Positions 16,724 through 50,144 of a DNA stretch of 64,000 bases are shown one piece after another. Numbering within the stretch: the stretch's first letter is position 1; each line of letters opens with the position of its first letter. The notes below the pieces were generated by a model. That model made no database searches. It saw only the letters and a list, made by a program, of their open reading frames with translations, and was not told the origin of the DNA. The stretch covers positions 6,138,001-6,202,000 of the forward strand of contig NC_043010.1 in the NCBI RefSeq assembly GCF_006345805.1, read 5' to 3'. Source of the DNA: Octopus sinensis (lineage: Eukaryota). The position numbers and the translations under genes were made by a program.

Positions 16724-16974
16724 TCACGTCTTTGGTATTGGTGGTAATGGTCTAGAATAACAATTAAAACTGTTTTTCATTGGTAAATTCCAAGGTTTCT
16801 GTGACAAGGGAGGGTCTGTTGGATTAATTCTTCCGAGTTTCAAATCAATGATGTCAGCGGTAGATTGATTGGTAGATTGATTATTTACAAACGAGCAGCC
16901 CTCAGAAGAAACGTTGTCATTTTTTGGGTGTAAAGGTGGGTTAGACAACTTAATGTCTGATTCATCTCGACAGC
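16724..16974 (-). CDS. Pcdh: Protocadherin terminal coding exon (cytoplasmic tail) of the central gene
   Basis: Long polypyrimidine tract and AG at 16976-16975. Phase-1 entry reads (G)CRDESDIKLSNPPLHPKNDNVSSEG...DIIDLKLGRINPTDPPLSQKPWNLPMKNSFNCYSRPLPPIPKT*. 251 nt, in frame with the 160-nt middle exon; paralogous to 49882-50144. Confidence 0.85.
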
Positions 16975-17231
16975 CTGAGAAAATATAAAGAAATGAATGT
17001 AAGGATAGAAAGAATAAAAAAAAGTCTCATTAACCCTACACCATCAAGCCAATCATATGCATGTGATATGTACATTAACCCTATATGTGATATGCATATG
17101 ACATACATATGACCCTATATGACCTGACACAGATGCATATGCATAGATAAATACAAGGCCTGCACCCACACATACATATGCATATCACACATAGACTGGT
17201 TTAGATGGTATAGGGTTAATTCATATCACAT

Positions 17232-17266
<35 letters not shown>

Positions 17267-17999
17267 AATAATGATAATAATAATAATGATGATGAAATTA
17301 TTGTATACAGTGCTCTAGTGCACCACAACTTGTCAGAAAGTGCATATAAAATATATGCAGTAATGTTCATATGTCTGGAAAGCGAACAATGCAAGAGTCA
17401 AATACATGCTTGTGTGTGTATGGAGGGGAGACAATCAGGTGTAGTGTTGGCGAATCTCAGGAAGCATGGAAGTTTTGAACCAGCACAGATATTCTATGCA
17501 TTTTATGTTAAAACTTGCCAGATCCAGCCTCTCACACTTACCCAATGAAAATAAACAATGACATCATCGAAATCTCGAAGCTACAAGATATTTCATGACT
17601 TATTCAATGCAATGAGAATAAGTAAGCTTTATATTTGTTAGAGTAATCTGAATGCTAAAAAAACGTAAGTCATTAATTTTTGATTTTGTCTTTTTTATTT
17701 ATATATTTTAGTCTGCAGGAAAGACAATGTCCATAACACCTTCTCTCCATTCACCCTTTCTGAGATAGGTGGAAGAGAAAGGAAGAGGGAGAGAGAGAGA
17801 GGGAGAGAGAGAGAGGGAGAGAGGAATTGACTCTCTGTCTGGAGATCTGGTCTGAGTGCTTGTAACAGAGTGGGTTCTGCCAAAGACATTCTGATCGGGC
17901 AAACTTATGATTGTAGACTGATTTGGCTGCTATTTCTGTTAGCAGAACTGACAGAGTATTATGTTTGTTCCTTCTCAAGCCACGCCTGGGTCATAAGGG

Positions 18000-18265
18000 C
18001 CGGTTTCCCAGTTTCCTTGGTGTATAGGTTCCCAAACTGGATGGGACGCTGGTCTGTTGCAGGTGGGCTGCGAGATGCAGGAGGAAAGAATGAGAGAAAG
18101 TTGTGGCAAAAGAGTCAGCAGAAGTTCACCATTACCTTCTGCTGGAGTCATGTGGAGCTTAGGTGTTTCACTCATAAACACACACATCACCCAGTCTGAG
18201 ATTCGAACCCGCGATCCCTTGACCGTGTGTCCGCTGCTCTAACCCCTAGGCCATGTGCCTCCACA
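18000..18265 (-). mobile_element. SINE family D-related copy
   Basis: tRNA-like head (tggcctaggggttagagcagcgg...gggttcgaatctc) on the minus strand; body shared with 36169-36541. Confidence 0.55.
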
Positions 18266-18602
18266 ACAGGGTGTTACCCATGTCTGTAACTGCTCATGGT
18301 TACATTGGTACCTGATATAACTAGAGTGCACTAACATGGTATGCTGGCAGAATCGTTACAGCACTAGACAAAATGCTTTGTGGCACTTCTTCTTACTTTA
18401 CATTCCAAGTTCAAGTGTCACCAGGATCGAGTTTGCCTCTCATAATTTGAGAGTCGATAAAAAAAGTACCAGCTAAACACTGGGGTCAATGCAATCGATT
18501 TACCCCTCCCCCAAAATTGATGGCCTTGTGTCAAAATTTGAAACCAGTATAATTAGGGTGCTTAGTGCTTGCTTTCAAATCATACTTGGCTGTAATGATA
18601 TC

Positions 18603-18776
18603 ATAGGCGCAGGAGTGGCTGTGTGGTAAGTAGCTTGTTTACCAACCACATGGTTCTGGGTTCAGTCCTACTGCGTGGCACCTTGGGCAAGTGTCTTCTA
18701 CTATAGCCTCGGGCCAACCAAAGCCTTGTGAGTGGATTTGGTAGACGGAAACTGAAAGAAGCCCGTCGTATATTTG

Positions 18777-18807
<31 letters not shown>

Positions 18808-19020
18808 ATATTTTTGTGTCTGTGTTTGTCCCCCTAGCATTGCTTGACAACCGATGCTGGTGTGTTTATGTTCCCGTCACTTAGCAGTTCGGCAAAAGAG
18901 ACCGATAGAATAAGTACTGGGCTTACAAAGAATAAGTCCCGGGGTCGAGTTGCTTGATTAAAGGCGGTGCTCCAGCATGGCCGCAGTCAAATGACTGAAA
19001 CAAGTAAACGAGTAAAGAGT
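18603..19020 (+). mobile_element. SINE family A (intron between middle and terminal exons)
   Basis: Full-length copy. Confidence 0.85.
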
Positions 19021-19474
19021 ATATCTTTCTAGTTATTTGCACAATATTTTATGTACTTTGTATTATTTCCTCAAATCATTCTAACATGAAGGAGAATGCA
19101 ATAATGGGCAGGTAACTCATTGTTTGGAGTGCTATACTGTCATAGACAAAAGATTCCCAAGGATTCCCCATTCACTTTGGTTTCTCTTGTTAAATCAAAT
19201 CCTGTGTGTACAGTTAAAACATTTCCGCAGACTCTGTATGAACTTTTAGCCTTTTGGCATTGGTGAATATATTCCAGTCATTCTATTCCCACTGTTTAAA
19301 GCAGGCAAGGGCAACCTTTGTCATGCAGCCTGCTGCCTGAGACTTGACCCATCATCAGGCGGGCTGCACAAACAAAAAATTCAAGGTAATTTTTCATTAT
19401 GCATGCTGCCCAGAAAGTCCATGAAAAAAAGAAACAAACAAAAAAGACCCCTGGTATATGGCTACAGTCTAATG

Positions 19475-19693
19475 CAGTGCTTTTCAACCTTTTTACTGGA
19501 GCGGAACCCCAAGAAAACATTTCACTGGCTCGAGGAACCCCTGTGCAATAATTTAATTGTCTTATGCACACATATCTGCACAGGAGAATTAAAAATTACT
19601 GTCGATTTTAGCATTTTTTAAACTTTTTGCGGAAACCCTGGACTGTACTGGCGGAACCTTAAGGTTCCGCGGAACCCTGGTTGAAAACCACTG
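19475..19693. mobile_element. hAT-superfamily MITE (219 bp)
   Basis: TIRs CAGTGCTTTTCAACC / GGTTGAAAACCACTG and a perfect 8-bp TSD GTCTAATG (19467-19474, 19694-19701). Confidence 0.9.
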
Positions 19694-19810
19694 GTCTAAT
19701 GAGCATAACAAGTAAAAAATAAAAGATACAAATAATTTCACTTTCATCCACACTTAAACCACTAAAGGAATAAATTGCACCTGTACTAAGATTAAATTAA
19801 TACCTGAAAC

Positions 19811-20038
19811 TTAACCCTTTAACATTCAGATTGCTCTTTCAAATATAATGCTTATTTATTCACTCTGTTTTGAATTAATAATGCATTATCTCATAGCTTT
19901 GAGATTTTGATGATGTGATTGTTCATTTTTAGAATGATATTGTAGGATAGGTGTAAAAGGCCAGATCTGGCCAGTTTGAACATAAAACAGGTAGAATATT
20001 TTGGCCAAATATGCCTAGTTTAAACACTAAAAGGTTAA
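19811..20038. mobile_element. piggyBac-like MITE
   Basis: TTAA at both ends with termini ccctttaac / ctaaaagg. Confidence 0.5.
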
Positions 20039-20286
20039 CGTGTATCGATATAATGATATTAATATGCAAGATGAATTCTCCTAATGACACAGTAATCAGT
20101 ATATTGTGACTGCAGTTTGTTCATACCTGTCCATTCCAGACCTTCTGAGACTAATGAGGTTGATGCATTGTGAGATTCATGATGTGTTACTTTGGTTAAA
20201 TATAAACATATATATCTTGTTTAATTCTAGACTAGCTACTAATGAAACTTAATTCAATTCGAGTGAGTTTCCTGATAATAATGTTA

Positions 20287-20598
20287 TCATCATCATCATC
20301 ATCATCGTTTAACGTCCGTTCTCCATGCTAGCATAGGTTGGACGGTTCGACCGGGGATCTGGGAAGCCAGAAGGCTGCACCAGGCCAGTCAGATCTGGAA
20401 GTGTTTCTACAGCTGGATGCCCTTCCTAACGCCAACCACTCCGTGAGTGTAGTGGGTGCTTTTTATGTGCCACCTGCACAGGTGCCAAGGGAGGCTAGCA
20501 ACGGCCATGATCAGTTGGTGCTTTTTATGTGCCACCAGCACAGAAGCCAGTCAAGGCGACGCTGGCATCAGCCACGATTCGGATAGCGCTTTTTACGT
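20287..20598 (-). mobile_element. SINE/LINE-tail family B ((ATG)n tail, ggatgcccttcct motif, internal ggtgctttttacgtgccacc repeats)
   Basis: Further copies at about 22825-23105 (-), 23404-23712 (+), 28440-28795 (+), 31850-32160 (+), 35235-35572 (-), 44290-44605 (+) and 46960-47208 (+). Confidence 0.75.
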
Positions 20599-20647
20599 AA
20601 AAATGATATTTCTTGATGGACAACACAAAGAGACTGGAACACCTTAC

Positions 20648-20807
20648 CTGGTAACTTCTCACAGAGAACTGTGTTCCACTCATTGTAACTAGAGTCATGT
20701 GTATCATAAGATCTATTGGGCTTCTCATTTAAAGAATTTGTTGATATAATCATTTCTTCTCTTCCTTGGAAGTCTCTGGGCATTGTCATCGTTTGATGTA
20801 AAGGCAT
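20648..20807 (-). CDS. Pcdh: Protocadherin middle coding exon (cytoplasmic)
   Basis: Acceptor ctctctctttt-AG at 20809-20808 and donor CAG|GTAAGG at 20647. 160 nt, phase 0 in and phase 1 out, stop-free (MPLHQTMTMPRDFQGREEMIISTNSLNEKPNRSYDTHDSSYNEWNTVLCEKLP). It is exactly what joins the phase-0 donor at 24163 to the phase-1 acceptor at 16974. Confidence 0.8.
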
Positions 20808-20954
20808 CTAAAAGAGAGAGTTGATTACAAAATAAAATTCAGTTAATTATAAAGTGAACTTATCAAAAACAGAATTTTTCTTTCAATAAATGTTACAACT
20901 CATCTTGAAAACCTACAAAATGTGTAATTAAACATGCACATGTCAAAGTAAGAT

Positions 20955-21209
20955 ACTCTCTCTTTTACTCTTTTACTCTTTTACTCTTTTTACTCTTTTA
21001 CTCTTTTACTCTCTTACTTGTTTCAGTCATTTGACTGCGGCCATGCTGGAACACCGCCTTTAGTCGAGCAACTCGACCCCGGGACTTATTCTTTGTAAGC
21101 CTAGTACTTATTCTATCGGTCTCTTTTGCTGAACCGCTAAGTAACGGGGACATAAACACACCAGCATCAGTTGTCAAGCAATGCTAGGGGGACAGACACA
21201 GACACACAA

Positions 21210-21262
<53 letters not shown>

Positions 21263-21431
21263 TACGACGGGCTTCTTTCAGTTTCCGTCTACCAAATCCA
21301 CTCACAAGGCTTTGGTCGACCCGAGGCTATAGTAGAAGACACTTGCCCAAGGTGCCACGCAGTGGGACTGAATTCCGGAACCACGTGGTTGGTAAACAAG
21401 CTACTTACCACACAGCCACTCCTGCGCCTAT
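20955..21431 (-). mobile_element. SINE family A (intron between large and middle exons)
   Basis: Full-length copy, inverted relative to 18603-19020. Confidence 0.85.
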
Positions 21432-21499
21432 GTTTGTTCTGTTTCAGCACTTTTACATCCATTGCAGTTCAATTCTTGCATCTATCCTCACTTAGGCTC

Positions 21500-21860
21500 A
21501 AGAAAGCTGGATAACGACTGAAAGAGTATGATCATAGATATGAACAGCTCAAATGGGGGTTTCTCCAAAGGATCTCTGGAGTAACATTACTTGAGGAAGT
21601 TCAAAGTTTGGAGATCAGGAAGTCTACCCAGGCTGAGTCTCTACTTCTCCACATTAAGAGGTCACAACCCCAGTACTACTGACATATGATTAGAATGTTG
21701 CAAGAACGACTTACAAGACAGATTCTTCAAACCAAGTCAACCAGCAGAAGACCAAGTGGTAGACCAAGAATGAAATGGTTGAATAATATCCATAGTCTTG
21801 GTTGGAAGAAAGAAATTTTAATGATGATTGCTACAGACTGGAGCCTGTGGAAAAAAAATA
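21500..21860 (+). mobile_element. RTE-type LINE 3' remnant
   Basis: Reads AQMGVSPKDLW in one frame and ...EIRKSTQAESLLLHIKRSQ...HMIRMLQERLTRQILQTKSTSRRPSGRPRMKWLNNI in another; the latter matches the RTE C-terminal R.RGRP..RW pattern. Confidence 0.6.
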
Positions 21861-22063
21861 GCTGAAAAATCTAACTCTATGTCTCTCCCAAGAATAACAG
21901 GCCATAAAAATGGATGGATTCAACTACTTTTTCATGCTGGGATAAGCTGGGAGAGATTTCTAGAAGCAGTTTTCCATGGCTAGACACCCTTCTTGGTATC
22001 GGCTCTTCTTTGAAAAGTAATGTACTATATTTCACTACACATATGCATATGCACATTCATACC

Positions 22064-22099
<36 letters not shown>

Positions 22100-23359
22100 G
22101 ACACACACACACTGATGATAAATTCCTGGCAGTTTCTATTTATTAAATTTCATTTTAAAGTGTTGATCAATTAAGGCAGGAAAAGATACCTTCCCCAAAG
22201 TGTCCTACAGTGGGACCAAGCCCTTAAGTGGATGGGAAGCAAACTTCTTAAACATACAGTAATGCCTGTGTTTCTCATTAAGCTTGCTATTTTGTGTCTT
22301 TGCTTCAGTCAATTATATACAATACACACATATCCAAGGATCATGTTTTTACATAAATAAATATCTTTGAAAGAAAAACTGAATTCATTCACATAATTTA
22401 TTCGTAAAATTGTCCTTGAATATGCTTATCTCATTTGCCATTATTGCATGTATTTTGTTAAGAAGTCATTCCAAAAGAAAGAATTGCTTTTCCCATTATC
22501 ACTTAAGAAAATATAATATGCTGGTGTGTCTCAGGCGACATGGTTAGAGTAGAGTATAGTAAGACAACAGGGTAATGTCATTAGTAGGAGAGGTTAGGAA
22601 GGTAAAGGAGAAAGGGGAAATACTGATACTGAATAAATTAAGAGAACTTAAAAGAAGTTAGAAATGAGACAATAAAATATAGGCTTGGCTGTGTGGTTAA
22701 GGAGCTTGTATTGCAACAACATAGTTTTGGGTTCAGTCCTGCTGTGCGGCACCTTGGGCATGTGTCTTCTACTATAGCTCCAAGCTGACCAATACCTTGT
22801 TTGTGAATTTGGTAAGCAAAAGCAGTCATCATCATCAACATCATCATCGTTTATACGTCCGCTTTCCATGCTGGCATGGGTTGGACGATTTTGACTGAGG
22901 ACTGGCAAACCACATGGCTGCACCAGGCTCCAATCTTGATCTGGCAGAGTTTCTACAGCTGGATGCCCTTCCTAATGCCAACTACTCCGAGAGTGTAGTG
23001 GGTGCTTTTTACGTGCCACCGGCACGGGGACCAGTCAGGCGGAACTGGCAATGACCTCGCTCGAATCCTTTTACACATGCCACCAGCACAGGTGCCAGTA
23101 AGGTGACAATTAAAAAAAACATGTAGTAAATAAGCAAATGAACATATACTAAATACACAGGCAAAACAGAAGGTCACCCACACTTCATCAGTTGTCAGCC
23201 AGAGGGTCAAGCACAAATTCAGCCATTACTGATAATATTGGTTCCGCTCTGGAGGCACTGGCCAGAAACTTACCAGGAATGGGACCAAAACATAACAAAA
23301 TGAGACAGGCTCGAGATGAGACCATTAGTTATGTAATGCACACACTCATTAATTTTCTA

Positions 23360-23403
<44 letters not shown>

Positions 23404-23404
<1 letters not shown>

Positions 23405-23712: not shown

Positions 23713-24162
23713 TATATATATGGCCAACCAAAGTCTTGTGAAAGGATCTGGCAGACAGAAACTGGAAGAAACCCATTGTGCACATCTGAGTGTGTTTGTG
23801 TGTGCATGTGTGTTTGTGTGTGCGTGTGTGTGTGAGTGTGTGTGTGTGCGCGTAAGTTTGTGTCTTTGTGTTTATTGTCCAGTATCATTTGACAACTGGT
23901 GTATGTTTTCTTGCACCTTCATAACTTAGCATTTTGGCAAAAGAGACCAATAGAATAAGTATCAGAATTTTAAAAATAAGTACTGGTACCAATTTGTTCA
24001 GCAAAAACATTCTAGGCCATGCCCCAGCAAGGCCAGTGTCTAAACAATTAAAACAATTAAAAAAAAAAATAAAGGAAACCTTATTTTAAACTCTGAAATT
24101 TCAAAAATGCCAGACACGGTTCAGATGTTACGAAATCCATCAGTGTTAGAAAAATTACTTAC

Positions 24163-26556
24163 CTGAGTGGTTCCATGGCAGATGTTATGTCGATTGAAAG
24201 GTAATGTAGAACATTTCTGTGTTGATTGAGGGTAAAGCTCCTTTCTCGATATTGTCGCCTGAGAAACTGCAGGATTAATTCCTGGGTGTGTTGTTAATAT
24301 AACTTCTTGACTGTCACTTTGGGGAGGCATTGGGTTACATCTATACTCAGACTGTCTTCTTTCATTCGGAAATTTCTGACCCTGTTCGCGCCTTTCACAG
24401 TAAAGGATTTCCCTCCGATGGTTCCTCCTCACAATGCACACTGTGATGGAGACCACAATAGTTATAGATACAATAACTGCTGCCACTAGTATAATAACCA
24501 TCACATTGATAGGTATTTCTCTGGTTGACAGTTTGTGAAGACTTGTTGAAAATTTGGAAGTACTATTGCTGACTGTCAGTTTCAAAGTTAATGAAGTTGT
24601 TGTTGACAAAACTGGAGTGCCACTATCTTTAACAGACAAATTCAGTTTATAGAAACCAGCATCAACTTTGTAAACAGAGCGAGAAAAAGACATGACTCCA
24701 GAATACATGTCAAGGGAAAATAATTTCTTGTCATTGCCATCAAGAATTTCATATTGAAGGAAAGAATTCAATTGACTATCTCTGTCGTATGCTCTGAGGG
24801 TTGTGATGGCTTTTTGTCTTTGAGGATGGTAATGGACTTTAAGGTGGAATGGATCAACTCCAGGAAAAGTGAAATATGGAACGTTATCATTTTTATCCAT
24901 AATTTCAACAATGACATTTGCTGTATTTCTCAATGAGGGTGTTCCATTGTCTTTGACCACAACTACCAATCTGTATCTGTCTTGCTTCTCTCTATCCAGT
25001 GACTGTGTTGTTGTAATGTATCCGAAGTGGGAAATTTTAAAAGGAAGTAAATTTTCAGTAGAATTCATGAGATAATAGGTCAGGTGACCACCTGCACCCA
25101 GATCTGGATCAGTGGCATTGATTAGACCAATTGGAAAGTCTGGTTCTCCATTTTCATATGTAAAAAATTGAAAGCTTTCCTGGCTGAACTGAGGTTTTAC
25201 ATCATTGATATCTGTCACTTGTATAGAAATTTTTCTAACAGCTGTCTTTGGAGGAGTGCCTCTGTCTTGACAAGATATGTTAAAATCAATGTAGCTGTTT
25301 GCTTCCCTGTCTATGGTATTCTTCACAACTATTTTATATTTCTTGTCATCCAGTGGCTGAAGAATAAATTTATCATGTTCCAGTTGACAACTTACTTGCC
25401 CATTGCTTCCAATATCATTGTCAATGACCTTCACATATGCTACAAAGCTACCAATATCAACATCTTCAGAAATGCTGGCCGTGTCTTCATTTGTCTGTGA
25501 AAAGAAGTTGAGTTCTATACTTGGGCTCGAGTTATCCTGATTTTCAATGTTGATTTGTAGAATGGCTGTTGAGCTCATTGATGGACTGCCGCCATCTCTG
25601 GCATCAATATACAACAAATATTTGTGTTTCTTATTAAATGAGATATTATTTGACAAGAATACTTCTCCTGTTGTCATGTTTACTTTGAAATGTAATTTGG
25701 CCAACGGTATGGTTTTGGGATGGAAATGGTAAGAGACTTTTCCATTTCTTCCAGCATCAATATCACTTGCTTGTAACCTAACAATGGGTTTGTCTGTTTG
25801 GTGTGTATTATTTAGTGAAATATTATAGGTATTTTGAGCAAATATTGGTGCATTATCATTTTCATCTGTGACAATTATCTCAATATTTAAAACACCTACT
25901 TTTGGTGGAGTGCCTCCATCTTTAGCAATTACTTGTACAAAGTAAGTGTCTTTCACTTCTCGATCTAATTCTTCCATTAGAATGACAGCAAGCCTAGAAT
26001 TCCCACCATGTTCTTCAGAAACCGATAGCTGGAAAGGTTCTTTGAAATTTTCTTTGAATTCATAACTAATCAAAGAATTCTGTTCACTGATATCTCTGTC
26101 TCTAGCAGCTGGGACTGGTATTTTTGCTCCTTCACTCTCTCTTTCGGAGAATTGAAGACTAATATGTTTGGAAGGAAACGTTGGTGCATTATCATTCACA
26201 TCATTTATCGTAATCTTTACGTCTAAGATTTTAATAAATGATTTCTTATTCCGGACAGCAACTTCTAATGTTCTGTAACACTCAAGTTGATATAAACACA
26301 AGGATTCAGCGTCCAGGGGCTGAGCAGTGTAAAGTTTCCCTTCTTTGGTCACAATGAATAAATCAGAATTTTCTTTGTTTTTCAAAATAATGAATGTTAG
26401 TGCCTCTGATGTGGTACTCCAGAGTGACTTTGAGGCATCGGCTGCAATATCCCCGATAAAAATGTTGGATGTTTCGTGTTCATCAGTATTGTAGACTATA
26501 TCAAAACCAACAGCTGCAGAAATCCATGATAATAGCAAACACACTCGTGCAAACAT
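24163..26556 (-). CDS. Pcdh: Protocadherin large exon: signal peptide, EC1-EC6, TM and membrane-proximal tail (full model join 26556-24163, 20807-20648, 16974-16724 = 934 aa)
   Basis: The 811-aa ORF has six cadherin repeats (DVNDNAP, DENDNAP, NQDNSSP, DINDVKP, DKNDNVP; DRE and DxD motifs) and a TM segment (VMVIILVAAVIVSITIVVSITVCIV) followed by RRNHRR. Consensus donor CAG|GTAAGT after codon 798 (GT at 24162-24161). Acceptor ttttttttatcttcAG at 26625-26624, so the exon begins at 26623 in the 5'UTR. Confidence 0.97.
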
Positions 26557-27035: not shown

Positions 27036-27061
<26 letters not shown>

Positions 27062-27066
<5 letters not shown>

Positions 27067-37976: not shown

Positions 37977-38141
37977 ATAGGTGCAGGCGTGGCTGTGTGG
38001 TAAGTAGCTTGCTAACCAACCACATGGTTCCGGGTTCAGTCCCACTGCGTGACATCTTGGGCAAGTATCTTCTGCTATAGCCCCGGCCAACCAATGCCTT
38101 GTGAGTGTATTGGTAGACGGAAACTGAAGAAGCCTGTCGTA

Positions 38142-38193
<52 letters not shown>

Positions 38194-38410
38194 GTATGTG
38201 TGTGTGTGTTGTGTGTCTGCGTTTGCCCCCTCATTGCTTGACAACCGATGCTGGTGTGTTTACGTCCCCGTCACTTAGCTTTAGCGGTTCGGCAAAAAGA
38301 GACCGATAGAATAAGTACTGGCTTACAAAGAATAAGTCCCGGGTTCGATTTGCTCGACTAAAGGCGGTGCTCCAGCATGGCCGCAATCAAATGACTGAAA
38401 CAAGTAAAAA
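37977..38410 (+). mobile_element. SINE family A
   Basis: Full-length copy. Confidence 0.85.
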
Positions 38411-38985
38411 CAAAAACAAAAAGAAACAAATATCAATATATATAATATATATATGTACTTCTATACATTTATGTTTGTACACATATACATATACCTGTAT
38501 ATATAGGTGTATGTATACATACAAAAATATATATGTACATGTGTGTATATGTATGCATGTATGTATGTATGTATTTATTCATAAAAACGGAATGGGAGGT
38601 ATGAAAAAATATTTACAAAGTGAGAAAATAAACCCAGGTTATCTTATCATAAGCGTAAGTGTTATCTTCCGCTCACATCTTCCCAGATGTTTCAGAGGGG
38701 GTAATCTACCTTTAATTTGTTTTGTTTTTTTTGTTGTTTTCTTTATCTTTTCATATTTCATTTTCTGTTATGAGACTTTAAAAACTTTCCCATTTTCTTA
38801 TATATTGCAAGCTGCCTATGAAAAAGGGGCCAAGTCAGCTGAATATAATAGTCACTCACACAATGCTGACCTCTTTTGTATAAATCTCTTAATAACTGAA
38901 GCTTAGAAGAAAAATACCAGATCTACCTCATTGCATTAAAACAAATAAATATGTTTAGATATTATCATTGTTAGTAATAATGATG

Positions 38986-42088: not shown

Positions 42089-43380
42089 ATATATTTTCAC
42101 CATCTTATACAAAATATTGGAGAGAAAAAGAGGAATTCTGCAATTAGTGTTAAAACAAAATATCTAATGTGTCTACTGTTAGTATAAATATAAGTTTGGT
42201 AGAATATTTCCTGTTTCATTCTGGGTATTTATCTAAAGACAGCTGACCAAAGTAGAATCTCAACAGCATGAACTAATTAACCATGCTTATTGCTGTTCTA
42301 ATATCCAAGTTTTAATCAAGTGAAATGGTTTCTAAGCAATCCAATATTTAAGCTGATTATTTAAAATTTTTTATGTTTGAAGAATTATGTCTCAAAAGGA
42401 TTTTTAATCTTTGGTTTATAATTCTGTCTCATTATGTTAATGATATTAATTATAAAATAAATATTGGTTCATAGTTGCTTTATACCGGTATCTATATGCT
42501 ATATAGAACACATACCCTTCCCCGAGAAAGGCTTGTTTAGCTTAATGTTTAAATACAAAGTCCCAAAAGATTCCTGATAAAACCACAAACTGGAGTCTAT
42601 GTTTATTTATTTATGCTTTGTTTGCAGTTCTTATCTAGTCTTATACACAAGGGAAAACTCCCCAAAAGATTCAAATTTAATTGAAATAAAATATATATAA
42701 ATACATAGCAAGATGAGTCGGTGTTAAACATTTGCTCAGCATTGATCAAAGGATCTTATAATCAAATCCATTCTAGCCGTGACCATCATGTCTTTTATTT
42801 CAGTTTATCTAGAAGTATGTGTCCTCTTGTGGTAGGGGTGTGATCTGCAGAAAATTTATCTGCTATTTCTAGCAGTTTGAGCAACTACATAGAGAGTCTC
42901 TTGAAAAGTTGATAGTGGTATAACATTGGAGAGAAAAGATGGTTAAACTGATTTGGTAGCCAGACAACGAACTTGTTGAGAAGCCTGCATTTATATTCTA
43001 TAACCAGCTTTGCATCTGCTTGTCCATGACTAAGGCACTTAACCCACTAAGACTGAGTCCGTAAGTCTTTATGTAAGTATGATGGTCAATATAACAGACC
43101 AGTCTAGATAATAGCAACGTTGTGGAATTGAAGAGGGACCTACTGGCTTATAGTGTTATCTACAGTTACTCCTGTGAGTAAAAGTTGTCTATGACAGACC
43201 AAGATCATAATAAAGGGGAAAGTTATCCCTCCTCCAAACACTAGCAAAATAAAGTAAACACTAGCCTTTTGATTCAGTAAAGCATGACGACACATTGAGA
43301 GGTGTACTTAGTAGACGCATAAGGGATATTTGTTCTCTTACGTAATGGCTCATACTATGTTACCCGATTGTACTATATAC

Positions 43381-43594
43381 TCTTTACTCTCTCTTTTACT
43401 TGTTTCAGTCATTTGACTGCGTCCATGCTGGAGCACCGCCTTTAGTCGAGCAAATCGACCCCCGGGACTTATTCTTTGTAAGCCCAGTACTTATTCTATC
43501 GGTCTCTTTTTTGCCGAACCGCTAAGTGACGGGGACGTAAACACACCAGCGTCAGTTGTCAAGCAATGCTAGGGGGACAAACACAGACACACAA

Positions 43595-43627
<33 letters not shown>

Positions 43628-43820
43628 CATATATACGACAGGCTTCTTTCAGTTTCCGTCTACCAAATCCACTCACAAGGCATTGGTCGGCCCGGGGCTA
43701 TAGCAGAAGACACTTGCCCAAGATGCCCCGCAGTGGGACTGAACCCGGAACCATGTGGTTGGTTAGCAAGCTACTTACCACACAGCCACTCCTGTGCCTA
43801 TTGGCCACTCCTGCGCCTAT
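43381..43820 (-). mobile_element. SINE family A with duplicated 5' end
   Basis: Full-length copy; the head gccactcctg(t/c)gcctat occurs twice. Confidence 0.85.
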
Positions 43821-45519
43821 AATAATATATCCTGTCCAAACTGACTTTATCCTCACTGGCTTAATTCACAGAACAGCAACAGCAACACTATGAAGAAGTA
43901 CTTCTTTAAAACACTTTTCATTTCGACCTGCCTGAGTTTGCCAAAAGTTCTATGACACAAAATTGTTCATTTACCAGTGTTTATATTTAAATAAAAATAT
44001 TTCTTTACAATTTTATATTAGTTATGGTGTAAACACCAGCTTGGATAATAAAGGAATTAATAATTTCTACTTAAGCATTTCAAATTTTTGATTATGGAAA
44101 CACATGCACATGAGAACTATGGTTATGTAAGAATTGAATCTACAAACTTCTGGGAGTGCAGTCAGTATAATTGCCAAGTTTAGTCCATAAGGGACTGCTT
44201 TGAATAAAACAGTAGCACCATGATACAGCTGCTATCACTCTTGAGTAAGTGTAACTTGGTAAGGTGGACCATGCTGTTATTAACTGTTGTGCTGGTGGCA
44301 CGTAAAAAGCATCATCTGACCATGGCCGATGCCAGCTCCGCCTTGACTGGCTTCTGTGCCAGTGGCACGTAAAAAGCACCAACTGATCGTGGCCGTTGCC
44401 AGCGCCGCCTTGACTGGCTACCGTGCCGGTGGCACGTAAAAAGCACCCACTACACTAACGGAGTGGTTGACGTTAGGAAGGGCATCCAGCTGTAGAAACA
44501 CTGCCTGATCAGACTAGAGCCTGGTGCAGCCTTCTGGCTTCCCAGACTCCAGTCAAACCGTCCAACCCATGCTAGCATGGAAAACGGACGTTAAACGATG
44601 ATAATGTAGCTACAAGCAGACATAGACAACATCTCATGTCTCTCTCATCTTTGACCTCAGCGGAACATTCAGGGTGTGATAGCTAGAGGGAGTGAGGACT
44701 GCACCAGTATCTGGCTTGCACTAATAACAGCTGCATAGCCTGCAATAATGTGAAATGAAGCATCTTGCTCAAGGGTTTGAATTAAACCCACAACCTTATT
44801 ATTATGAGCTGAAACATCTTAACCACTAAGGACACACACTCCTCTGATGGAAAGACTATTGGAGCCCTTATCTTCATTACACTTATCCCCAGTTAACGTT
44901 TTCAGAGAAATGAGCCCTGTGAGGTGGAGTGGCTGTTGCAATGAGTATCGCTGGCCATGGGGCACAGCTGAGTGCACCATTTGTTCTGGGGTATATGGCC
45001 CATCGTTCCCTCCCCTCCTATCTTCAGCCATGAACTAGCACAGTTTTTATCATAGTAAGCCACAACAGATGAATAATAATCTTTTTACTCGAAGAAGACT
45101 GCATCATCATTATAAGAAATACCAAAAAATGTATCATCAATATGTATTCTAAATAATAGTTCTTGCATTAATTTTCTCTAACGAAGCACTTTGAGAATTT
45201 CAAGCAGTTTTTCTTGACTATTTTCAGCTTATATTGAAAAAAAAAAAAAAAAATTACATGTTTATTTATTTTAATACTTAGTTAATGAACACTAAACGAA
45301 CCATATGCAAACGATAAAAAAGAAATCTCAGGATATAAAATTCAGGAAACCCCAGAACTGCTTTTTAAATATCCGTACAAAAATATTATTATTATTGTTG
45401 TTGCTGTTGTTGTTGCTATTATTCCAGGGTTGATTATACAAAATTATCAGTCAAGTACTAGGATCAATATACTTGACAAACACCTCCCTCAAATTTTTAA
45501 CTATGTGCCAATGTTAGAA

Positions 45520-45559
45520 ATCATCATCCTCATTATTATCATTATTATTATTGTTATTA

Positions 45560-45633
<74 letters not shown>

Positions 45634-45940
45634 ATTATTATTATTATTGAGTGAGAGAGCAGTACATGCCATCAAAGTGACACTGGGGTAGAATATACAA
45701 AGCCCAGTATATATACCAATCATGACTACCTGTCTGATAAGTGTACACCAGGTACATGCATCACAACCAGATGTGCATGACTTGGTGATTTCAAATCAAG
45801 ATAAACAACACATGACCTTGCAGGTGGGGGCCCGAGTTAGAATTGTCTTCAGGTCAAGTAGCCTGCCCTGCACAATAGGTCCCGGAATAAGGGTTGTTTA
45901 AGGATGTTGAATGAAACACCCATGTTTTCAGAGGTAATAT
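45520..45940 (-). mobile_element. Probable retroelement 3' end with an (AAT)n/(AAC)n tail
   Basis: About 290 bp of mixed sequence abutting a long trinucleotide array; family not identifiable from sequence alone. Confidence 0.35.
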
Positions 45941-46172
45941 CATCATCACCATCAGCATCATCATCATCATCATTGCTTTTGATTGTTATACTTAATTTTC
46001 AGCTCTTTTCCTTATTTGTTTTATATTTTTCATGGCAGAAGGCTCCTTTAAATTTTGTCATTGTAAATGAAATTTTGGAGCAAAAAAAAAGGATTCTTAT
46101 AACTGGTTTCTCTTTATAAGCACCAAATATTTTGTAGTCATTCCAGTTTTCATAATGCTGTAGTAGTGGTAC

Positions 46173-46229
<57 letters not shown>

Positions 46230-47212
46230 CAGCAGCAGCAGTAGCAACAGCAGCAGTAGCAGCAGTCTCGATTGAGGAAGCATAACTTCAAAATCATTAC
46301 AGCCAGGACCTTCCCATCTCTCAAGAGTTATCTAGAAATATATTATTTGATGGATTCTTTCTTTTTGCTTTTCAAAAATGCTAGGCAGTAGTTTGAGGAA
46401 ACTTTATTGCATGACCACATAGACGTTCCTGGCTGCTATATTTAGCAGGTCTGGCAACCATGAATAGGGTGAGAAAAAAAAACCTTTCTGAGTCAAAGAC
46501 TCAAAGGGGCATTTTTCTGGTTTTTGTGGCGTATATATTACCCTTGTACAAACTTGGCTTATCAAGGGATCTATAGCTACATCATGATACCCGCAAAGTA
46601 TGTTGAGAAATATCAATTAAAAGTTTAGTTTTGATGACTGAATATATTAGCTTTTTGTGATGCTGATCCATCCATCTGTCTATTGCAGGATTATTCATTT
46701 TTGCCAGCTGAGTGGTGTACTGGAGCAATGTGAAATGAAGTGCTTGCTCAAGAACACAATTCATTGCCCGATCCAGGAATCAAGACTACAATACATTCGT
46801 GAGTCTCGTACCCCAACCACTAAGTCTGCATCTCCATGAATAGACTACCTTGTTAGCTTGTTATTATTTAAGTTATTCAGGTATATGATACTCAAGAAGA
46901 CCTGTCATCCACAGCAGAAATGTTAAGGTCGCATCCCCTGGTGAAGAGCATTGTCCCGCAAGAGTCCTATGCTGGTGCCACATAAAGTGTGCTTGTGCTG
47001 GAGCCTCATAAAAACCACTCATGCTGGTGCCATGTAAAAGCCAGTGGTATGTTTAAAAGCACTCAGCACACACTGTAAAGTGGCTGGCATCAGGAAAGGC
47101 ATAAAGCCATAGAAACCAAGCCAAATCAGAACGGAACCTGGTGCAGCTGGCTAGCTTACCAGCTCTGGTCGAAATGTTCAACCTATTCCAGCATGGAAAA
47201 TGGACATTAAAA

Positions 47213-47432
47213 CCCTTTCGTTACCAACCCGGCTGAAACCAGCTCTGGCTCTGAGTACAAATGTCTTGTTTTCATAAGTTTTTAATTAAAATTTTCCACT
47301 AAACCTTAGTCACAATTTATGTTCCTAACACTGGCTGAATGATAACTAAGTTATTTTACTAAATTCTTTGTTATATTTAAAGTAATTGAAAGAAACACAG
47401 AGCATCTCAAAATAAATACAGTAACGAAAGGG
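47213..47432. mobile_element. piggyBac-like MITE, second copy
   Basis: Inverted homologue of 34530-34750; TTAA at 47433-47436. Confidence 0.8.
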
Positions 47433-48224
47433 TTAACCCATATATGCCCATAAAAATAAAGAAGTCTTAAAATTCCACTGTATTTAGATTAAACATTATG
47501 GTAGGCTTTCACAATCTGGAAAAGAAGGACAGCATGCAACTGTTAGCTACGGGTGTCGACTGCCTAATGAGCATTGCTTCCCGGTGAGTTCATGTCCAAA
47601 GAAGTAGGAGCAGGTTTTACATTGTGAAAATGCAAAAAGGGGTATATATGCTGATGAAGGATGGTAATGAGGATGATGATATTTTAATATGGAGAAATAT
47701 TCATTTGTTTTTTTGTTTTTTTTAAATAGTCATTAGGCACTAAAAGAATAAGGTGAAATCATGTCGTTTGCATTTTTTTAAAGAGCAGCATAAAAGAATA
47801 GAATTGGCACCAAACCAAGAAATGCTGACCACAATGTACAAACTTGGTTTATCGTGGGATCTTATAGCCACTTCATGATTCCCCCAAAGTATGTTGAGAA
47901 ATATCAATTAAAAGTTTTGTTTTGATGACTGAATATATTAGCTTTTGTGATGATGATATAAAAATGGGTATATGGGTGTGTGTGTGTGTACATGTATACA
48001 CACATAGATACATACTTACATATATACTTACATATGTACATATATATATATGTATGTGTCTGTGTGTATGTTTATATGTTAGGGCTATATATACAAGCAA
48101 TGCATATGAGTGATATATATATATATATTTAATGGTGATATACTTGATGATTGTAAGCACCTGTATATGCCAGCTAGTGGTGTAGGTGATAGGATATATT
48201 TATGTCTTTGGTGTGGTAATTGTG

Positions 48225-48313
48225 TGCGGCTGAAGAAGGCTGTTGACCTACATGTTATATCAATTATACATTGATATAAATTGTTCAATAAAGCCAGAAA
48301 CATATGTACCGCA
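48225..48313 (+). ncRNA. Minimal type I hammerhead ribozyme (Penelope/retrozyme-like)
   Basis: Stem I tgcgg/ccgca; CTGAAGA 48230-48236; long stem II (ggct/agcc, gttga/tcaat, ttatatcaat/attgatataa); GAAA 48297-48300; palindromic stem III ACATATGT; GUA cleavage triplet ending at 48308. Confidence 0.7.
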
Positions 48314-48348
48314 AAACCCTTTGCATCCTGTTTTTCTTTTAATGGTAA

Positions 48349-48380
<32 letters not shown>

Positions 48381-49279
48381 AATATATATTATATATATAT
48401 ATATATTATATATATATATGTGTGTGTGTGTGTCATTATTTAGTTTTGTATGTTTGTATGTATATATGTATGTGTGTTTGAGAGTAATATATGCTTAGTG
48501 ATGATATTAAAAGGGGTACTACATATGTGGTGGTAATACATGTAAGTGGCATATATTAAGTGAAGATATAAAAAGGGGTACTATATATTTGGTGATTATA
48601 TACATATAGATATAAGTGACATATGCTTAGTGGTGGAATATATCGATATATAATAAGAGTGATACGTATTTGGTGGTTATATATAGATATACATAAGTGA
48701 TATATATATATATATATATATGTGTGATTTTAGGTAACAGTTTAGTTGAATAATGGTCTAAAATATATTGGAGGCAACCACTGTAGTTAATATTTGACTA
48801 TTAAGATACAACTGACGGGTCTTTCACTAAATGAACATAATGAATATAGAACCCCATTTTAGGGAACAGTAATTAGGCACCATAATTTTAAAAGGAAAAA
48901 AATCCTTATCAAATGTTAATTAGTATGACTTATTGGCTATTGTTTATTGGATGAAGATTTACTATGATTGGGCAGACATTGGAGGGATTTCAATGTAAAT
49001 GAGTATAAAAATATTTCATTATATTAGAATTGTCAGATATAAAAAAAAAAAAATTAAGAGAAATTTTATACTGAATCAAGAAATGTACTATGAATATAAA
49101 GTGTTTGTGTGTGTGTGTGTGTGTATGTGTGCATGTGTGTGTGTGCGTATGTGCATGCGCATGTGTGTGTGTGTGTGTGTGTGTTTTGGATATTTACATG
49201 CATGAGTATATGAGGAAATAAAGGAGTAAATATTGAATAAAACATACCAGGTATACCAGGTATATATATATATATATAC

Positions 49280-49322
<43 letters not shown>

Positions 49323-49542
49323 TGCACACATATATGTATATGTATATTTGTACAGTATGTTTTTGTATATAGGTTTTTTTCTTTGTGTTCAAATCTGTGT
49401 ATTATATATTAAGAATGAAATTCAAACTTCTGAGTCAAAGATACAGACCCTCAATAGAGTTCAAATTCTATATTCAATATACAAAAATAATAAAAATCAC
49501 ATGATTTGAGTGGATGTTTTGAAGCATTGAGCCTTTTATATA

Positions 49543-49753
49543 CAAGGTGTTCATAAATTATTTTTACAACTTCCACAATTTATCACTTAGATGTGTTGTA
49601 TGCAACTAATAGAGCACCTGTGGAAGTGTTATTATATTTTCAATAAAATTTTATTTGTTTGCCTATGCTTTCCAATAAACTCTGCTGAGTTATCCTTATT
49701 TTTCATTTTTTACTGAATTTTTTAAATTGTAAAGATAATTTATGAACACCATG
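49543..49753. mobile_element. Tc1/mariner-type MITE in the 3'UTR region of the upstream protocadherin
   Basis: TA|CAAGGTGTTCATAAATTA ... TAATTTATGAACACCATG|TA. Confidence 0.75.
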
Positions 49754-49881
49754 TATTATATTACCATAGGTAATTCTCTCATTCGATATAAAGGTTTGCA
49801 ATACTGAAATGTGTCACATCCTGGTCGTAATGTATAAATTTAAATTTCTTAATGGAACTTTTATGTGTGTAGTTCCATAAG

Positions 49882-50144
49882 TTACATCTTTGGTATTGCT
49901 GGCAGTGGTTTTGAATAGCAATTGAAACTGTTTTTCTTTGGTAAATTCCAAGGTTTTGATGCCAATGTAGGATCTGTTGGGTTAGCTCTGTTTGATTTCA
50001 GATCAATGATATCGGTAGGAAGCGGGTTTTTAGGTTTGTTCAGTGACTGATTGCATTCTGGTGAGGAAGTGTCATAGTCACTCTTCTTGTTGAAAGACTG
50101 TTGGGGATATTCAGGCAATTCCGGTTCTATCTCGTCCATTCTGG
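49882..50144 (-). CDS. Pcdh: Terminal coding exon of the preceding protocadherin (rest of the gene upstream or outside the window)
   Basis: Pyrimidine tract and AG at 50146-50145; phase-1 entry; 263 nt. Reads RMDEIEPELPEYPQQ...DIIDLKSNRANPTDPTLASKPWNLPKKNSFNCYSKPLPAIPKM*. 33 of the last 43 aa are identical to the 16724-16974 exon. Confidence 0.85.

What the first reader, a model, noticed from the sequence alone, without database searches (positions are those of the whole stretch)
16724..50144. Each clustered Pcdh carries its own copy of a conserved constant-like tail ending in an SH3-ligand motif
Seen: two terminal exons 33 kb apart encode DIIDLKLGRINPTDPPLSQKPWNLPMKNSFNCYSRPLPPIPKT* and DIIDLKSNRANPTDPTLASKPWNLPKKNSFNCYSKPLPAIPKM*. 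They are 33 of 43 identical, while the first halves of the exons diverge, which points to purifying selection. Established: RPLPPIP fits the class I SH3-binding consensus RxLPPxP. Vertebrate clustered Pcdhs share spliced constant exons that couple to kinases such as Pyk2, FAK and Src-family members. Inference: octopus may reach a common signalling output by duplicating a conserved tail module with every gene rather than splicing to one shared constant region. I do not recognise this motif from vertebrate Pcdh tails.
Basis: partly seen in the sequence, partly recalled or inferred. Interest (0 to 1): 0.8.

Follow-up and report, generated by a model that had tools for sequence, protein, structure and literature searches.

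The report
Private SH3-motif tails on octopus protocadherins
Two neighbouring octopus protocadherin genes each end in their own last exon encoding a conserved, disordered tail with a textbook SH3-docking proline motif; the tail is real and under selection, but it marks one octopod subfamily rather than every gene, and no binding partner has been tested.

Summary
Both 43-aa peptides lie on the minus strand (16727-16855 and 49885-50013) and are 33/43 identical. The window is Octopus sinensis CM016872.1:6138001-6202000.

Tail 1 is the last of three GT-AG exons (26556-24163, 20807-20648, 16974-16724). Their translation equals RefSeq XP_029644513.1, and an O. vulgaris protein entry (QBA31124.1) carries the same tail. 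Tail 2 is the last exon of the upstream paralogue, whose other exons lie beyond the window.

The tail has three parts: [DN][VI]I[DN]LK, a variable spacer, then WNLPx[KR]N[ST]Fxx[YF]x[KR]PLPxΦP[K]. It is the most conserved stretch of a cytoplasmic domain predicted to be disordered. Between Octopus and Argonauta orthologues, the last 22 codons show 0 nonsynonymous and 5 synonymous changes.

Thirty of the 120 closest octopod protocadherins carry it. All 30 fall in one block of 51 leaves in the ectodomain tree. Other subfamilies have different private last exons. A profile search of 1.84 billion representatives found it only in octopods.

The [KR]PLPxΦP core meets every position of the class I SH3 consensus, but binding is untested. 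Private exons instead of shared constant exons were already published; the motif itself appears undescribed. Interest is moderate.

The parts
24163..26556 (-). Exon 1 of O. sinensis 'protocadherin gamma-B1' (XP_029644513.1): signal peptide, six cadherin repeats, transmembrane segment and juxtamembrane region (aa 1-798). The donor is cag|GTAAGT.
   Evidence: 811-aa ORF. Pfam finds Cadherin x5 plus Cadherin_2. Exact reconstruction of the 934-aa protein with GT-AG introns.
20648..20807 (-). Exon 2 (160 nt, aa 799-852). It ends in ...NTVLCEKLP|G, the position where most octopod paralogues read Y-E-[ET]-[LI]-P.
   Evidence: tblastn 100% to P0001 aa 799-852. Splice sites. Motif counts.
16724..16974 (-). 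Exon 3, the private terminal coding exon (aa 852-934 plus stop). The first half is variable and the second half is the conserved tail.
   Evidence: The acceptor is ttttctcag|GC.
16838..16855 (-). Block A of tail 1: D-I-I-D-L-K (family consensus [DN][VI]I[DN]LK[ST]).
   Evidence: Alignments A1/A2. Mean pairwise identity is 0.68, against 0.24 for the adjacent spacer.
16727..16792 (-). Block B of tail 1: WNLPMKNSFNCYSRPLPPIPKT. It contains the conserved [KR]-N-[ST]-F, a conserved Tyr and the proline motif.
   Evidence: P26, N29 and F31 are invariant; W23, N24, L25, S30, K36, P37, L38, P39 and P42 are at least 90% conserved. Mean pairwise identity is 0.74. AlphaFold pLDDT rises to 67-86 only here, in an otherwise disordered domain.
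16733..16753 (-). RPLPPIP: class I SH3-ligand pattern (+xΦPxΦP) of tail 1.
   Evidence: Compare the canonical c-Src class I ligand VSLARRPLPPLP (PMC4509517).
49882..50144 (-). Terminal coding exon of the upstream paralogue (O. sinensis 'protocadherin gamma-B1-like', P0002, aa 847-933 plus stop). Its exons 1 and 2 lie beyond window position 64000, and intron 2 is about 30 kb.
   Evidence: tblastn 100% to P0002. In L001 the exons are at 10001-12391, 14747-14923 and 45297-45557, and window 39882-64000 equals L001 55560-31442 at 100%.
49885..50013 (-). Tail 2: DIIDLKSNRANPTDPTLASKPWNLPKKNSFNCYSKPLPAIPKM. The class I motif KPLPAIP is at 49891-49911.
   Evidence: The A. hians orthologue P0003 has an identical block B with 5 synonymous and 0 nonsynonymous differences.
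3..395 (-). Start (ATG 393-395) of exon 1 of the next protocadherin gene downstream. It is head-to-tail with the others and runs off the window.
   Evidence: 132-aa open frame. It is 67% identical to P0118 and 47-51% to other octopod protocadherins.

Best explanation
The two peptides are the C-termini of two adjacent, head-to-tail protocadherin genes of Octopus sinensis. Each gene has three coding exons. Each last exon carries a private copy of a roughly 45-residue module of short linear motifs:
- block A, [DN][VI]I[DN]LK[ST];
- a variable Ser/Thr/Asn/Pro-rich spacer;
- block B, WNLPx[KR]N[ST]Fxx[YF]x[KR]PLPxΦP[K].

The module characterises one octopod protocadherin subfamily. It has been copied along with each gene during tandem duplication and is kept by purifying selection. 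These steps are shown.

It lies in an intrinsically disordered cytoplasmic domain (predicted). Most likely it is a docking site whose core, [KR]PLPxΦP, is a class I SH3 ligand of the type preferred by Src-family kinases. The flanking [KR]-N-[ST]-F and Tyr may be specificity contacts or phosphorylation switches. If so, many different ectodomains would share one cytoplasmic output without shared constant exons. These steps are inferred.

RefSeq tail-less isoforms suggest that tail inclusion may be regulated by alternative 3' processing (inferred from models).
For: Gene model and transcript link:
- The GT-AG exons reproduce XP_029644513.1 exactly.
- The O. vulgaris protein entry QBA31124.1 has the same exon 2-3 sequence.

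Private copies, with three exons and their own tail exon in five genes of two species:
- the window gene;
- P0002 in L001;
- the A. hians P0003 in L002 and P0012 in L003. P0012's tail is intact in one open frame although the model omits it;
- P0054 in L005;
- neighbouring genes P0010 and P0143 have different tails.

Distribution:
- 30 of the 120 best octopod hits carry the tail.
- All 30 lie within one block of 51 leaves in the ectodomain neighbour-joining tree.
- The profile search of 1.84e9 representatives gave 14 hits; the 12 with E below 1e-10 are tail-bearing fragments, and every one that carries a name or species is octopod.

Selection:
- Paralogue dN/dS is 0.23, and 0.14 for block B.
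- For the O. sinensis versus A. hians orthologues, block B has nd = 0 and sd = 5 (dS 0.6). The whole tail gives 0.10 and exon 1 gives 0.08.
- Flanking intron, UTR and the first half of the exon are at noise level.
- Block B is the most conserved part of the cytoplasmic domain: 0.74 mean pairwise identity against 0.23-0.29 elsewhere.

SH3 pattern in 34 tails:
- basic residue 34/34; PLP 31/34; Φ 32/34; last Pro 33/34.
- [RK]xxPxxP is otherwise almost absent from the last 200 residues of paralogues lacking these tails, with 1 occurrence in 71 proteins.

Disorder: AlphaFold2 mean pLDDT is 51 with no secondary structure.

Literature: class I ligands have a basic residue before PxxP, and RPLPPLP is the canonical c-Src ligand (PMC4509517).
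Against: - No binding data of any kind exist, and PxxP patterns are common.
- The conserved block (22 residues) is much longer than an SH3 core, so the true partner may recognise WNLP/NSF/Tyr rather than, or as well as, the prolines.
- Three of 34 tails have a broken PLP: KASSVIP, KPLTSVP and KPLSKVP.
- Which SH3 protein binds, if any, cannot be told from sequence.
- Tail-less isoforms and other subfamilies show the tail is not a universal output.
- Absence outside octopods rests on a library whose coverage of squid and cuttlefish proteomes I could not verify.
Confidence: 0.55

Rival explanations
1. The conserved core is the N-[ST]-F element, acting as a WIRS-like ligand for the WAVE regulatory complex. 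Several vertebrate protocadherins work this way. The adjacent PxxP might engage the Abi SH3 domain.
For: N, S/T and F are invariant or nearly so in 34 tails. WIRS is defined as Φ-x-T/S-F-x-x in disordered tails of membrane proteins, and it is used by δ2 and some α protocadherins (PMC10411975, PMC7339444). The tail is predicted to be disordered.
Against: The defining Φ position (a bulky hydrophobic residue) is Arg or Lys in 31 of 34 tails and never hydrophobic. A regex for [FLIMVWY]x[ST]F finds nothing in either window protein.
Confidence: 0.12
2. The tail is a sorting, trafficking or phospho-regulated module rather than a kinase-docking site. Examples would be control of surface delivery, endocytosis or axon/dendrite targeting. 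The [KR]xS/T site and the Tyr would be phospho-acceptors, and block A would be a β-strand or SIM-like element.
For: The S/T interchange with a basic residue at -2 looks like a basophilic kinase site, and Tyr is conserved in 30 of 34 tails. Block A (DVIDLK) resembles, from memory only, the VIDLT SUMO-interaction core of PIAS proteins. Exon 2 carries a YxxΦ-type motif in most paralogues. In vertebrates, PKC phosphorylation of the γ-Pcdh C-terminus regulates FAK release (PMC7339444).
Against: No canonical YxxΦ, dileucine, NPxY, PPxY or PDZ-ligand pattern lies within the tail itself. The best-conserved positions are the prolines and the basic residue of the class I pattern.
Confidence: 0.18
3. The similarity reflects DNA-level homogenisation (gene conversion between tandem paralogues) or recent duplication, without selection on the peptide.
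For: Gene conversion is clearly active here. Codons 200-750 of the two adjacent exon 1 sequences are 87-99% identical with third-position identity 0.8-1.0, whereas codons 1-200 are 49-63% identical.
Against: The tail exons are outside that tract (79% nucleotide identity, dS 0.69). Changes are concentrated at synonymous sites. Flanks and the first half of the same exon are unalignable. The motif persists across at least 14 diverged paralogues per species and between Octopus and Argonauta, at dS about 1.
Confidence: 0.03

Closest known systems
Constant region of vertebrate clustered protocadherins (Pcdhα/γ constant exons, coupling to FAK/Pyk2, Fyn and WAVE)
   Same: A common cytoplasmic C-terminal segment is attached to many different six-cadherin ectodomains encoded by large single exons in a tandem array. 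Both are thought to give a shared signalling output.
   Different: Here every gene has its own exons 2 and 3; nothing is shared by splicing (PMC9068888). There is no detectable sequence similarity. The tail covers only one subfamily. No kinase interaction has been shown.
Class I SH3 ligands of Src-family kinases (RPLPPLP; from memory also FAK RALPSIPKL and p130Cas RPLPSPP)
   Same: [KR]-P-L-P-x-Φ-P with a basic residue N-terminal to PxxP, in a disordered region. The window gene has RPLPPIP, one conservative change from RPLPPLP (PMC4509517). Most paralogues also carry an upstream Y-E-[ET]-[LI]-P. With the SH3 site this resembles the bipartite SH2 plus SH3 docking of FAK and Cas (from memory).
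   Different: Binding is untested. The conserved block extends 14 residues upstream of the SH3 core (WNLPx[KR]NSFxxY). In the window gene and its orthologues the upstream Tyr is Cys.
WIRS motif of δ2 and some α protocadherins
   Same: A short conserved x-[ST]-F element in a disordered protocadherin tail.
   Different: The Φ position is basic, not hydrophobic, in 31 of 34 tails.
Conserved motifs CM1-CM3 of δ-protocadherins and the 'octopus-specific motifs' listed from Albertin 2015
   Same: Family-specific conserved cytoplasmic or ectodomain motifs used to define protocadherin subgroups.
   Different: The published octopus list as reproduced in PMC6339937 Table S2 contains EC1, EC5, EC6, TM and PP1 ([RK][VI]xF) patterns only, with no C-terminal tail motif. 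No [RK][VI]xF occurs in the cytoplasmic domains of the two window proteins.

Membership tests
Octopod clustered protocadherin | Six extracellular cadherin repeats, one transmembrane segment and a large first coding exon | tested here: met
   Pfam Cadherin x5 plus Cadherin_2 at the N-terminus. 2394-nt exon 1. 98% identity to an O. vulgaris protocadherin.
Octopod clustered protocadherin | Head-to-tail tandem arrangement of complete multi-exon genes | tested here: met
   On the minus strand the order is: tail exon of the upstream gene (50144-49882), then exons 1-3 of the window gene (26556-16724), then the start of the next gene (395).; PMC9068888.
Vertebrate-type constant region | One set of 3' exons shared by many variable first exons through splicing | tested here: not met
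   Five genes each have their own exons 2 and 3. Neighbouring genes P0010 and P0143 have different tails.
Vertebrate-type constant region | Sequence similarity to Pcdhα/γ constant domains | tested here: not met
   The tail profile found no non-octopod protein at E <= 1e-3 among 1.84e9 representatives. No PDB chain matched at E <= 10. No Pfam family matched the cytoplasmic part.
Class I SH3 ligand (+xΦPxΦP) | Basic residue three positions before the first core proline | tested here: met
   K in 32 and R in 2 of 34 tails.
Class I SH3 ligand (+xΦPxΦP) | Two core prolines spaced PxxP, each preceded by a hydrophobic residue | tested here: met
   PLP in 31/34, V/I/L before the last Pro in 32/34, last Pro in 33/34.
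Class I SH3 ligand (+xΦPxΦP) | Located in an accessible, disordered segment | tested here: met
   AlphaFold2 on the 228-residue cytoplasmic domain gives mean pLDDT 51 and no secondary structure. This is a prediction only.
Class I SH3 ligand (+xΦPxΦP) | Physical binding to an SH3 domain | not testable with these tools
   Needs pull-down, peptide array, ITC or co-folding with octopus SH3 domains.
WIRS (WAVE regulatory complex ligand) | T/S-F core in a disordered cytoplasmic tail | tested here: met
   N-[ST]-F is invariant or nearly invariant.
WIRS (WAVE regulatory complex ligand) | Bulky hydrophobic residue at position -3 from Phe (Φ-x-T/S-F-x-x; PMC10411975) | tested here: not met
   R 16, K 15, Q 1, P 1, G 1; none hydrophobic.
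C-terminal PDZ ligand | [ST]-x-Φ or Φ-x-Φ at the extreme C-terminus, conserved among paralogues | tested here: not met
   The ends read -PKT, -PKM, -LPYA, -VPYQ, -TICS, -VPFS and others, with no common pattern.
δ1-protocadherin CM3 / PP1-binding motif | [RK][VI]xF (RRVTF) in the cytoplasmic domain | tested here: not met
   A regex finds none in P0137 or P0002.

The most novel reading that the evidence does not exclude
Octopod protocadherins may have convergently built a bipartite Src-family-kinase docking platform from private small exons. It would consist of a Y-E-[ET]-[LI]-P site at the end of exon 2 (like the SH2 optimum pYEEI) and a [KR]PLPxΦP class I SH3 site at the end of exon 3. This would functionally replace the FAK/Pyk2/Fyn-coupled shared constant region of vertebrate clustered protocadherins. 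Alternative 3' processing, giving the tail-less isoforms, would switch this output on or off for each gene.
Probability: 0.2. Interest if true: 0.7.

Novelty: new member of a known kind. Interest (0 to 1): 0.42.

Why it matters
Nothing is known experimentally about what octopus protocadherins do inside the cell. Published surveys report no vertebrate-like cytoplasmic motifs (PMC6339937).

A subfamily-wide, selected, disordered tail with a complete class I SH3 pattern gives a concrete entry point for testing. Peptides, point mutants and SH3-domain panels could show whether the independently expanded cephalopod protocadherins feed into tyrosine-kinase or actin signalling as the vertebrate ones do.

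It also shows that a 'constant-like' tail can be kept by selection on many private copies. Tail class also tracks ectodomain clade and chromosomal sub-array.

The organisational point itself (whole-gene duplication, no shared constant exons) is already in the literature.

Tried and rejected
- Word-index protein searches with the tail alone and with a 34-sequence tail profile found almost nothing, although full-length proteins with identical tails are in the same database. This is a limit of the index for short queries, not evidence of absence.
- The profile against PDB sequences gave 0 hits at E <= 10.
- Pfam found nothing on the cytoplasmic part.
- Literature string searches for the motif letters returned only unrelated papers. 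Searches for cephalopod protocadherin intracellular motifs found no description of this tail. The Albertin 2015 paper itself is not held, so its motif list was read second-hand from PMC6339937 Table S2.
- I looked for shared constant exons behind the very long RefSeq gene ranges of P0010 (137 kb) and P0044 (104 kb). No DNA was returned, but P0010 and its neighbour P0143 have different tails, so this was rejected on present evidence.
- Homology between the WNLP tail and the HYQDRYVKPPERQLPSTP tail of the YEEIP class was considered because both hold [RK]xLPxxP. It was rejected because the motif is broken in the more divergent members (RQLSLTP, KQLSLTQ).
- PDZ ligand, NPxY, PPxY, PP1 and canonical WIRS patterns are absent.
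- Look-ups of three short isoforms failed because only the longest product per gene is on record.
- A k-mer search for a shared promoter element in 600 nt upstream of eight start codons found nothing shared by more than three genes.
- tRNA and Rfam scans of the window were empty. Pfam on six miscellaneous ORFs was empty.

Full report
**1. Observation**

Both peptides are present exactly as quoted, on the minus strand. Tail 1 is at 16727-16855 with its stop at 16724-16726. Tail 2 is at 49885-50013 with its stop at 49882-49884. They share 33 of 43 residues and 102 of 129 nucleotides. Within the window the match has tblastn E-values of 1e-15 to 1e-16.

Those halves share 11 of about 40 residues and 59% of nucleotides. 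That is the same as shuffled controls and as the flanking intron and 3' UTR (60-61%). The tail is about 80% identical at the nucleotide level.

**2. What the exons belong to**

Window positions 39882-64000 are 100% identical to Octopus sinensis GCA_006345805.1, chromosome CM016872.1. The window is therefore CM016872.1:6138001-6202000.

The 811-aa ORF at 24121-26556 is a protocadherin ectodomain, transmembrane and juxtamembrane exon, with Pfam Cadherin x5 plus Cadherin_2. An exhaustive search over GT/AG boundaries gives one model: exon 1 26556-24163, exon 2 20807-20648, exon 3 16974-16724. Its translation is identical to XP_029644513.1, 'protocadherin gamma-B1 [Octopus sinensis]', 934 aa. The O. 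vulgaris protein QBA31124.1 (P0001) has the same exon 2 and exon 3 sequence at 100% identity.

Tail 2 is the last exon (50144-49882) of the upstream paralogue, P0002, 'protocadherin gamma-B1-like', 933 aa. Its exons 1 and 2 lie 16-21 kb beyond the window end, and its second intron is about 30 kb. A third protocadherin gene starts at 395 and runs off the window. The three genes are head to tail on the minus strand. So the 'would refute' condition that the exons are not spliced to protocadherin ectodomain exons is not met.

**3. How widespread the tail is**

Of the 120 best database matches to exon 1, all octopod, 30 end in a recognisable version of the tail. They come from O. bimaculoides, O. 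vulgaris, O. sinensis and Argonauta hians. Argonauta alone has 14 distinct tail-bearing paralogues in this sample.

The consensus has three parts:
- block A, [DN][VI]I[DN]LK[ST];
- a 12-35 residue variable spacer;
- block B, WNLPx[KR]N[ST]Fxx[YF]x[KR]PLPxΦP[K], followed by 0-8 further residues.

In a neighbour-joining tree of the ectodomains, all 30 tail-bearing proteins lie in one contiguous block of 51 leaves. I read this from the leaf order and did not test it formally as a clade. The other 21 leaves in that block are short models of 796-898 aa.

Several lines indicate these short models are alternative or truncated forms of tail-bearing genes:
- P0012 is annotated without the tail, yet L003 41375-41641 encodes exon 3 with an intact tail in a single open frame.
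- Three short isoforms could not be looked up because a longer product of the same gene is on record.
- RefSeq isoform sets pair a long, tail-bearing X1 with forms that stop just after exon 1 or exon 2.

The remaining 69 proteins belong to other groups with other endings. One example is a YEEIP-class array at 59.7 Mb on the same chromosome. Its genes are compact (4.4 kb), have three exons, and each has its own small exons but no WNLP tail. Tail-bearing genes located so far sit at 1.36, 3.55-3.61 and 6.14-6.23 Mb.

A profile of the tail was scored against all 1.84 billion cluster representatives. It gave 14 hits at E <= 1e-3. The 12 with E below 1e-10 are tail-bearing fragments, and every one that carries a name or species is octopod. 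No vertebrate, squid or other mollusc protein appeared. I could not verify how well decapodiform proteomes are represented in that library, so this negative result is moderate evidence only.

**4. Private, not shared**

In every gene where DNA could be read, the tail exon lies between that gene's own exons 1-2 and the next gene. Those genes are the window gene, P0002, the A. hians P0003, P0012 and P0054. Neighbouring genes P0010 and P0143 have different tails.

This agrees with the published statement that cephalopods do not splice multiple first exons to shared final exons but duplicate whole genes (PMC9068888).

**5. Selection**

- Between the two window tails, Nei-Gojobori dN/dS is 0.23, and 0.14 for the last 22 codons.
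- Between the O. sinensis and A. hians orthologues of the upstream gene, block B has 0 nonsynonymous and 5 synonymous differences. The whole tail gives 0.10. Exon 1 gives 0.08 at dS about 0.96.
- The Argonauta orthologue of the window gene keeps ...KNSFNCYSRPLPPIPKT unchanged.
- Across 19 paralogous cytoplasmic domains, mean pairwise identity is 0.74 in block B and 0.68 in block A. It is 0.63 in the five-residue Y-E-x-L-P element and only 0.23-0.29 everywhere else.

Gene conversion is active at this locus. Codons 200-750 of the two adjacent exon 1 sequences are 87-99% identical with third-position identity up to 1.0, while codons 1-200 are 49-63% identical. The tail exons are outside that tract, with dS 0.69 between them. 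The excess of synonymous over nonsynonymous change argues for protein-level constraint. The 'recent duplicate pair with neutral dN/dS' refutation is not met.

**6. What it most likely does**

AlphaFold2 with the paralogue alignment predicts the whole 228-residue cytoplasmic domain to be disordered: mean pLDDT 51 and no secondary structure. Confidence rises to 67-86 only over the last 28 residues. The tail is therefore best read as a cluster of short linear motifs.

The C-terminal core meets every defining position of a class I SH3 ligand:
- basic residue in 34/34 tails;
- P-L-P in 31/34;
- V/I/L before the last proline in 32/34;
- last proline in 33/34.

The window gene's RPLPPIP differs by one conservative change from the canonical c-Src class I ligand RPLPPLP (PMC4509517). 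Among the 71 proteins with neither the WNLP tail nor the YQDRY-type ending, [RK]xxPxxP occurs once in the last 200 residues.

Upstream, [KR]-N-[ST]-F shows a Ser/Thr interchange with a basic residue at -2, which looks like a phospho-acceptor site. A Tyr is conserved in 30 of 34 tails. These readings are inferences.

The N-[ST]-F element recalls the WIRS motif used by vertebrate δ2 and α protocadherins. However, the defining hydrophobic Φ position is Arg or Lys in 31 of 34 tails (definition in PMC10411975). I therefore do not file it as WIRS.

No PDZ-ligand, NPxY, PPxY or PP1 pattern is present.

I commit to SH3 docking as the most likely mechanism (0.55). A Src-family kinase is the best single guess, but it is far from certain. 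Nothing here tests binding.

**7. A related feature outside the quoted peptides**

Exon 2 ends, in 76 of 120 octopod proteins, with Y-E-[ET]-[LI]-P. It reads YEEIP in the non-tail groups and YETLP or YEELP in the tail group. This is a YxxΦ pattern. From established knowledge it is also close to the Src-family SH2 optimum pYEEI.

Together with the SH3 pattern, this suggests a bipartite docking arrangement of the kind known in FAK and p130Cas (recalled from memory, not tested). The window gene and its orthologues in three other species have Cys in place of this Tyr (LCEKLP). The upstream gene has YEELP.

**8. Comparison with what is known, and novelty**

The genes are annotated, and their organisation as whole-gene duplicates is published. 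Published motif surveys of octopus protocadherins list EC1, EC5, EC6, TM and PP1 patterns and report no vertebrate-like cytoplasmic motifs (PMC6339937 and its Table S2). None of the papers I could search describes this tail. The original 2015 genome paper is not held.

I therefore rate this as a new member of a known kind: a lineage-specific conserved linear-motif module in a protocadherin tail. It is not a new kind of system.

**9. Verdict**

- Observation: confirmed.
- Interpretation: partly supported. 'Each Pcdh' should read 'each member of one octopod subfamily'. The private-exon idea is known. SH3 binding is a well-founded but untested prediction.
- Interest: 0.42.

Noticed in passing
window 24163-26556 (minus) versus L001 10001-12391: Identity between the two adjacent paralogues' first exons is mosaic. 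Codons 1-200 (EC1-2) are 49-63% identical, with third-position identity 0.34-0.45. Codons 200-750 (EC3 to juxtamembrane) are 87-99% identical, with third-position identity 0.8-1.0. This looks like recent gene conversion or partial duplication that spares the N-terminal repeats.
   Followed up: partly
window 20648-20662 (3' end of exon 2, minus strand); same position in 76 of 120 octopod protocadherins: There is a conserved Y-E-[ET]-[LI]-P element exactly at the exon 2/3 junction: YEEIP, YETLP or YEELP. It fits YxxΦ and resembles the Src SH2 optimum pYEEI. The window gene and its orthologues in O. bimaculoides, O. vulgaris and A. hians read LCEKLP, with Cys for Tyr.
   Followed up: partly
window 24121-24162 (read-through past the exon 1 donor); RefSeq isoform sets of P0010, P0023 and P0143: Tail-clade genes have RefSeq isoforms that stop just after exon 1 or just after exon 2 (for example YEELPV*), so they lack the tail. 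In the window gene, an unspliced exon 1 would add VSNFSNTDGFRNI and then a stop.
   Followed up: partly
L003 41375-41641 (O. sinensis CM016872.1, about 3.57 Mb): The annotated protein P0012 (885 aa) lacks the tail, but the genome encodes exon 3 with an intact tail (...NNIINLKSTQADNTKPKLLQAQPWNLPTRNSFTSYTKPLPKVPYS*) in one open frame. The model uses a different 3' end.
   Followed up: yes
P0001 (QBA31124.1) aa about 277-300 versus window exon 1: The O. vulgaris sequence differs from the window gene in a patch (HFGTKTTPLAKLYFKLNNATGEV) that matches the upstream paralogue P0002 instead. This could be a chimeric transcript assembly or a conversion difference between species.
   Followed up: no
window 5548-5992, 9885-10310, 13658-14090, 18593-19024, 20991-21453, 37977-38453, 43374-43824, 50214-50944, 62861-63286: A dispersed repeat of about 420 nt (80-94% identity between copies, also many copies in L001) fills the introns and intergenic DNA. 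One degenerate copy lies directly upstream of the tail 2 acceptor. There is no tRNA or Rfam match.
   Followed up: partly
window 51131-51859 and 56727-57806: Long simple arrays lie inside the 30-kb second intron of the upstream gene: 9/15-nt periodic triplet-like repeats giving poly-Ser/His/Met/Asp open frames, and a 98-nt tandem repeat of about 11 units.
   Followed up: no
O. sinensis CM016872.1, genes of P0010 and P0044: RefSeq gene ranges are 137 kb and 104 kb for three-exon-type protocadherins, far longer than the 9-49 kb of the others. No DNA could be fetched, so whether other genes are nested inside is unknown.
   Followed up: partly
L004 (O. sinensis CM016872.1:59743556-59767982): The YEEIP-class protocadherins form a tight array of 4.4-kb three-exon genes about 95% identical to each other. 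Their last exons end ...HYQDRYVKPPERQLPSTPDVV, which also contains an [RK]xLPxxP pattern, but that pattern is broken in the more divergent members.
   Followed up: partly
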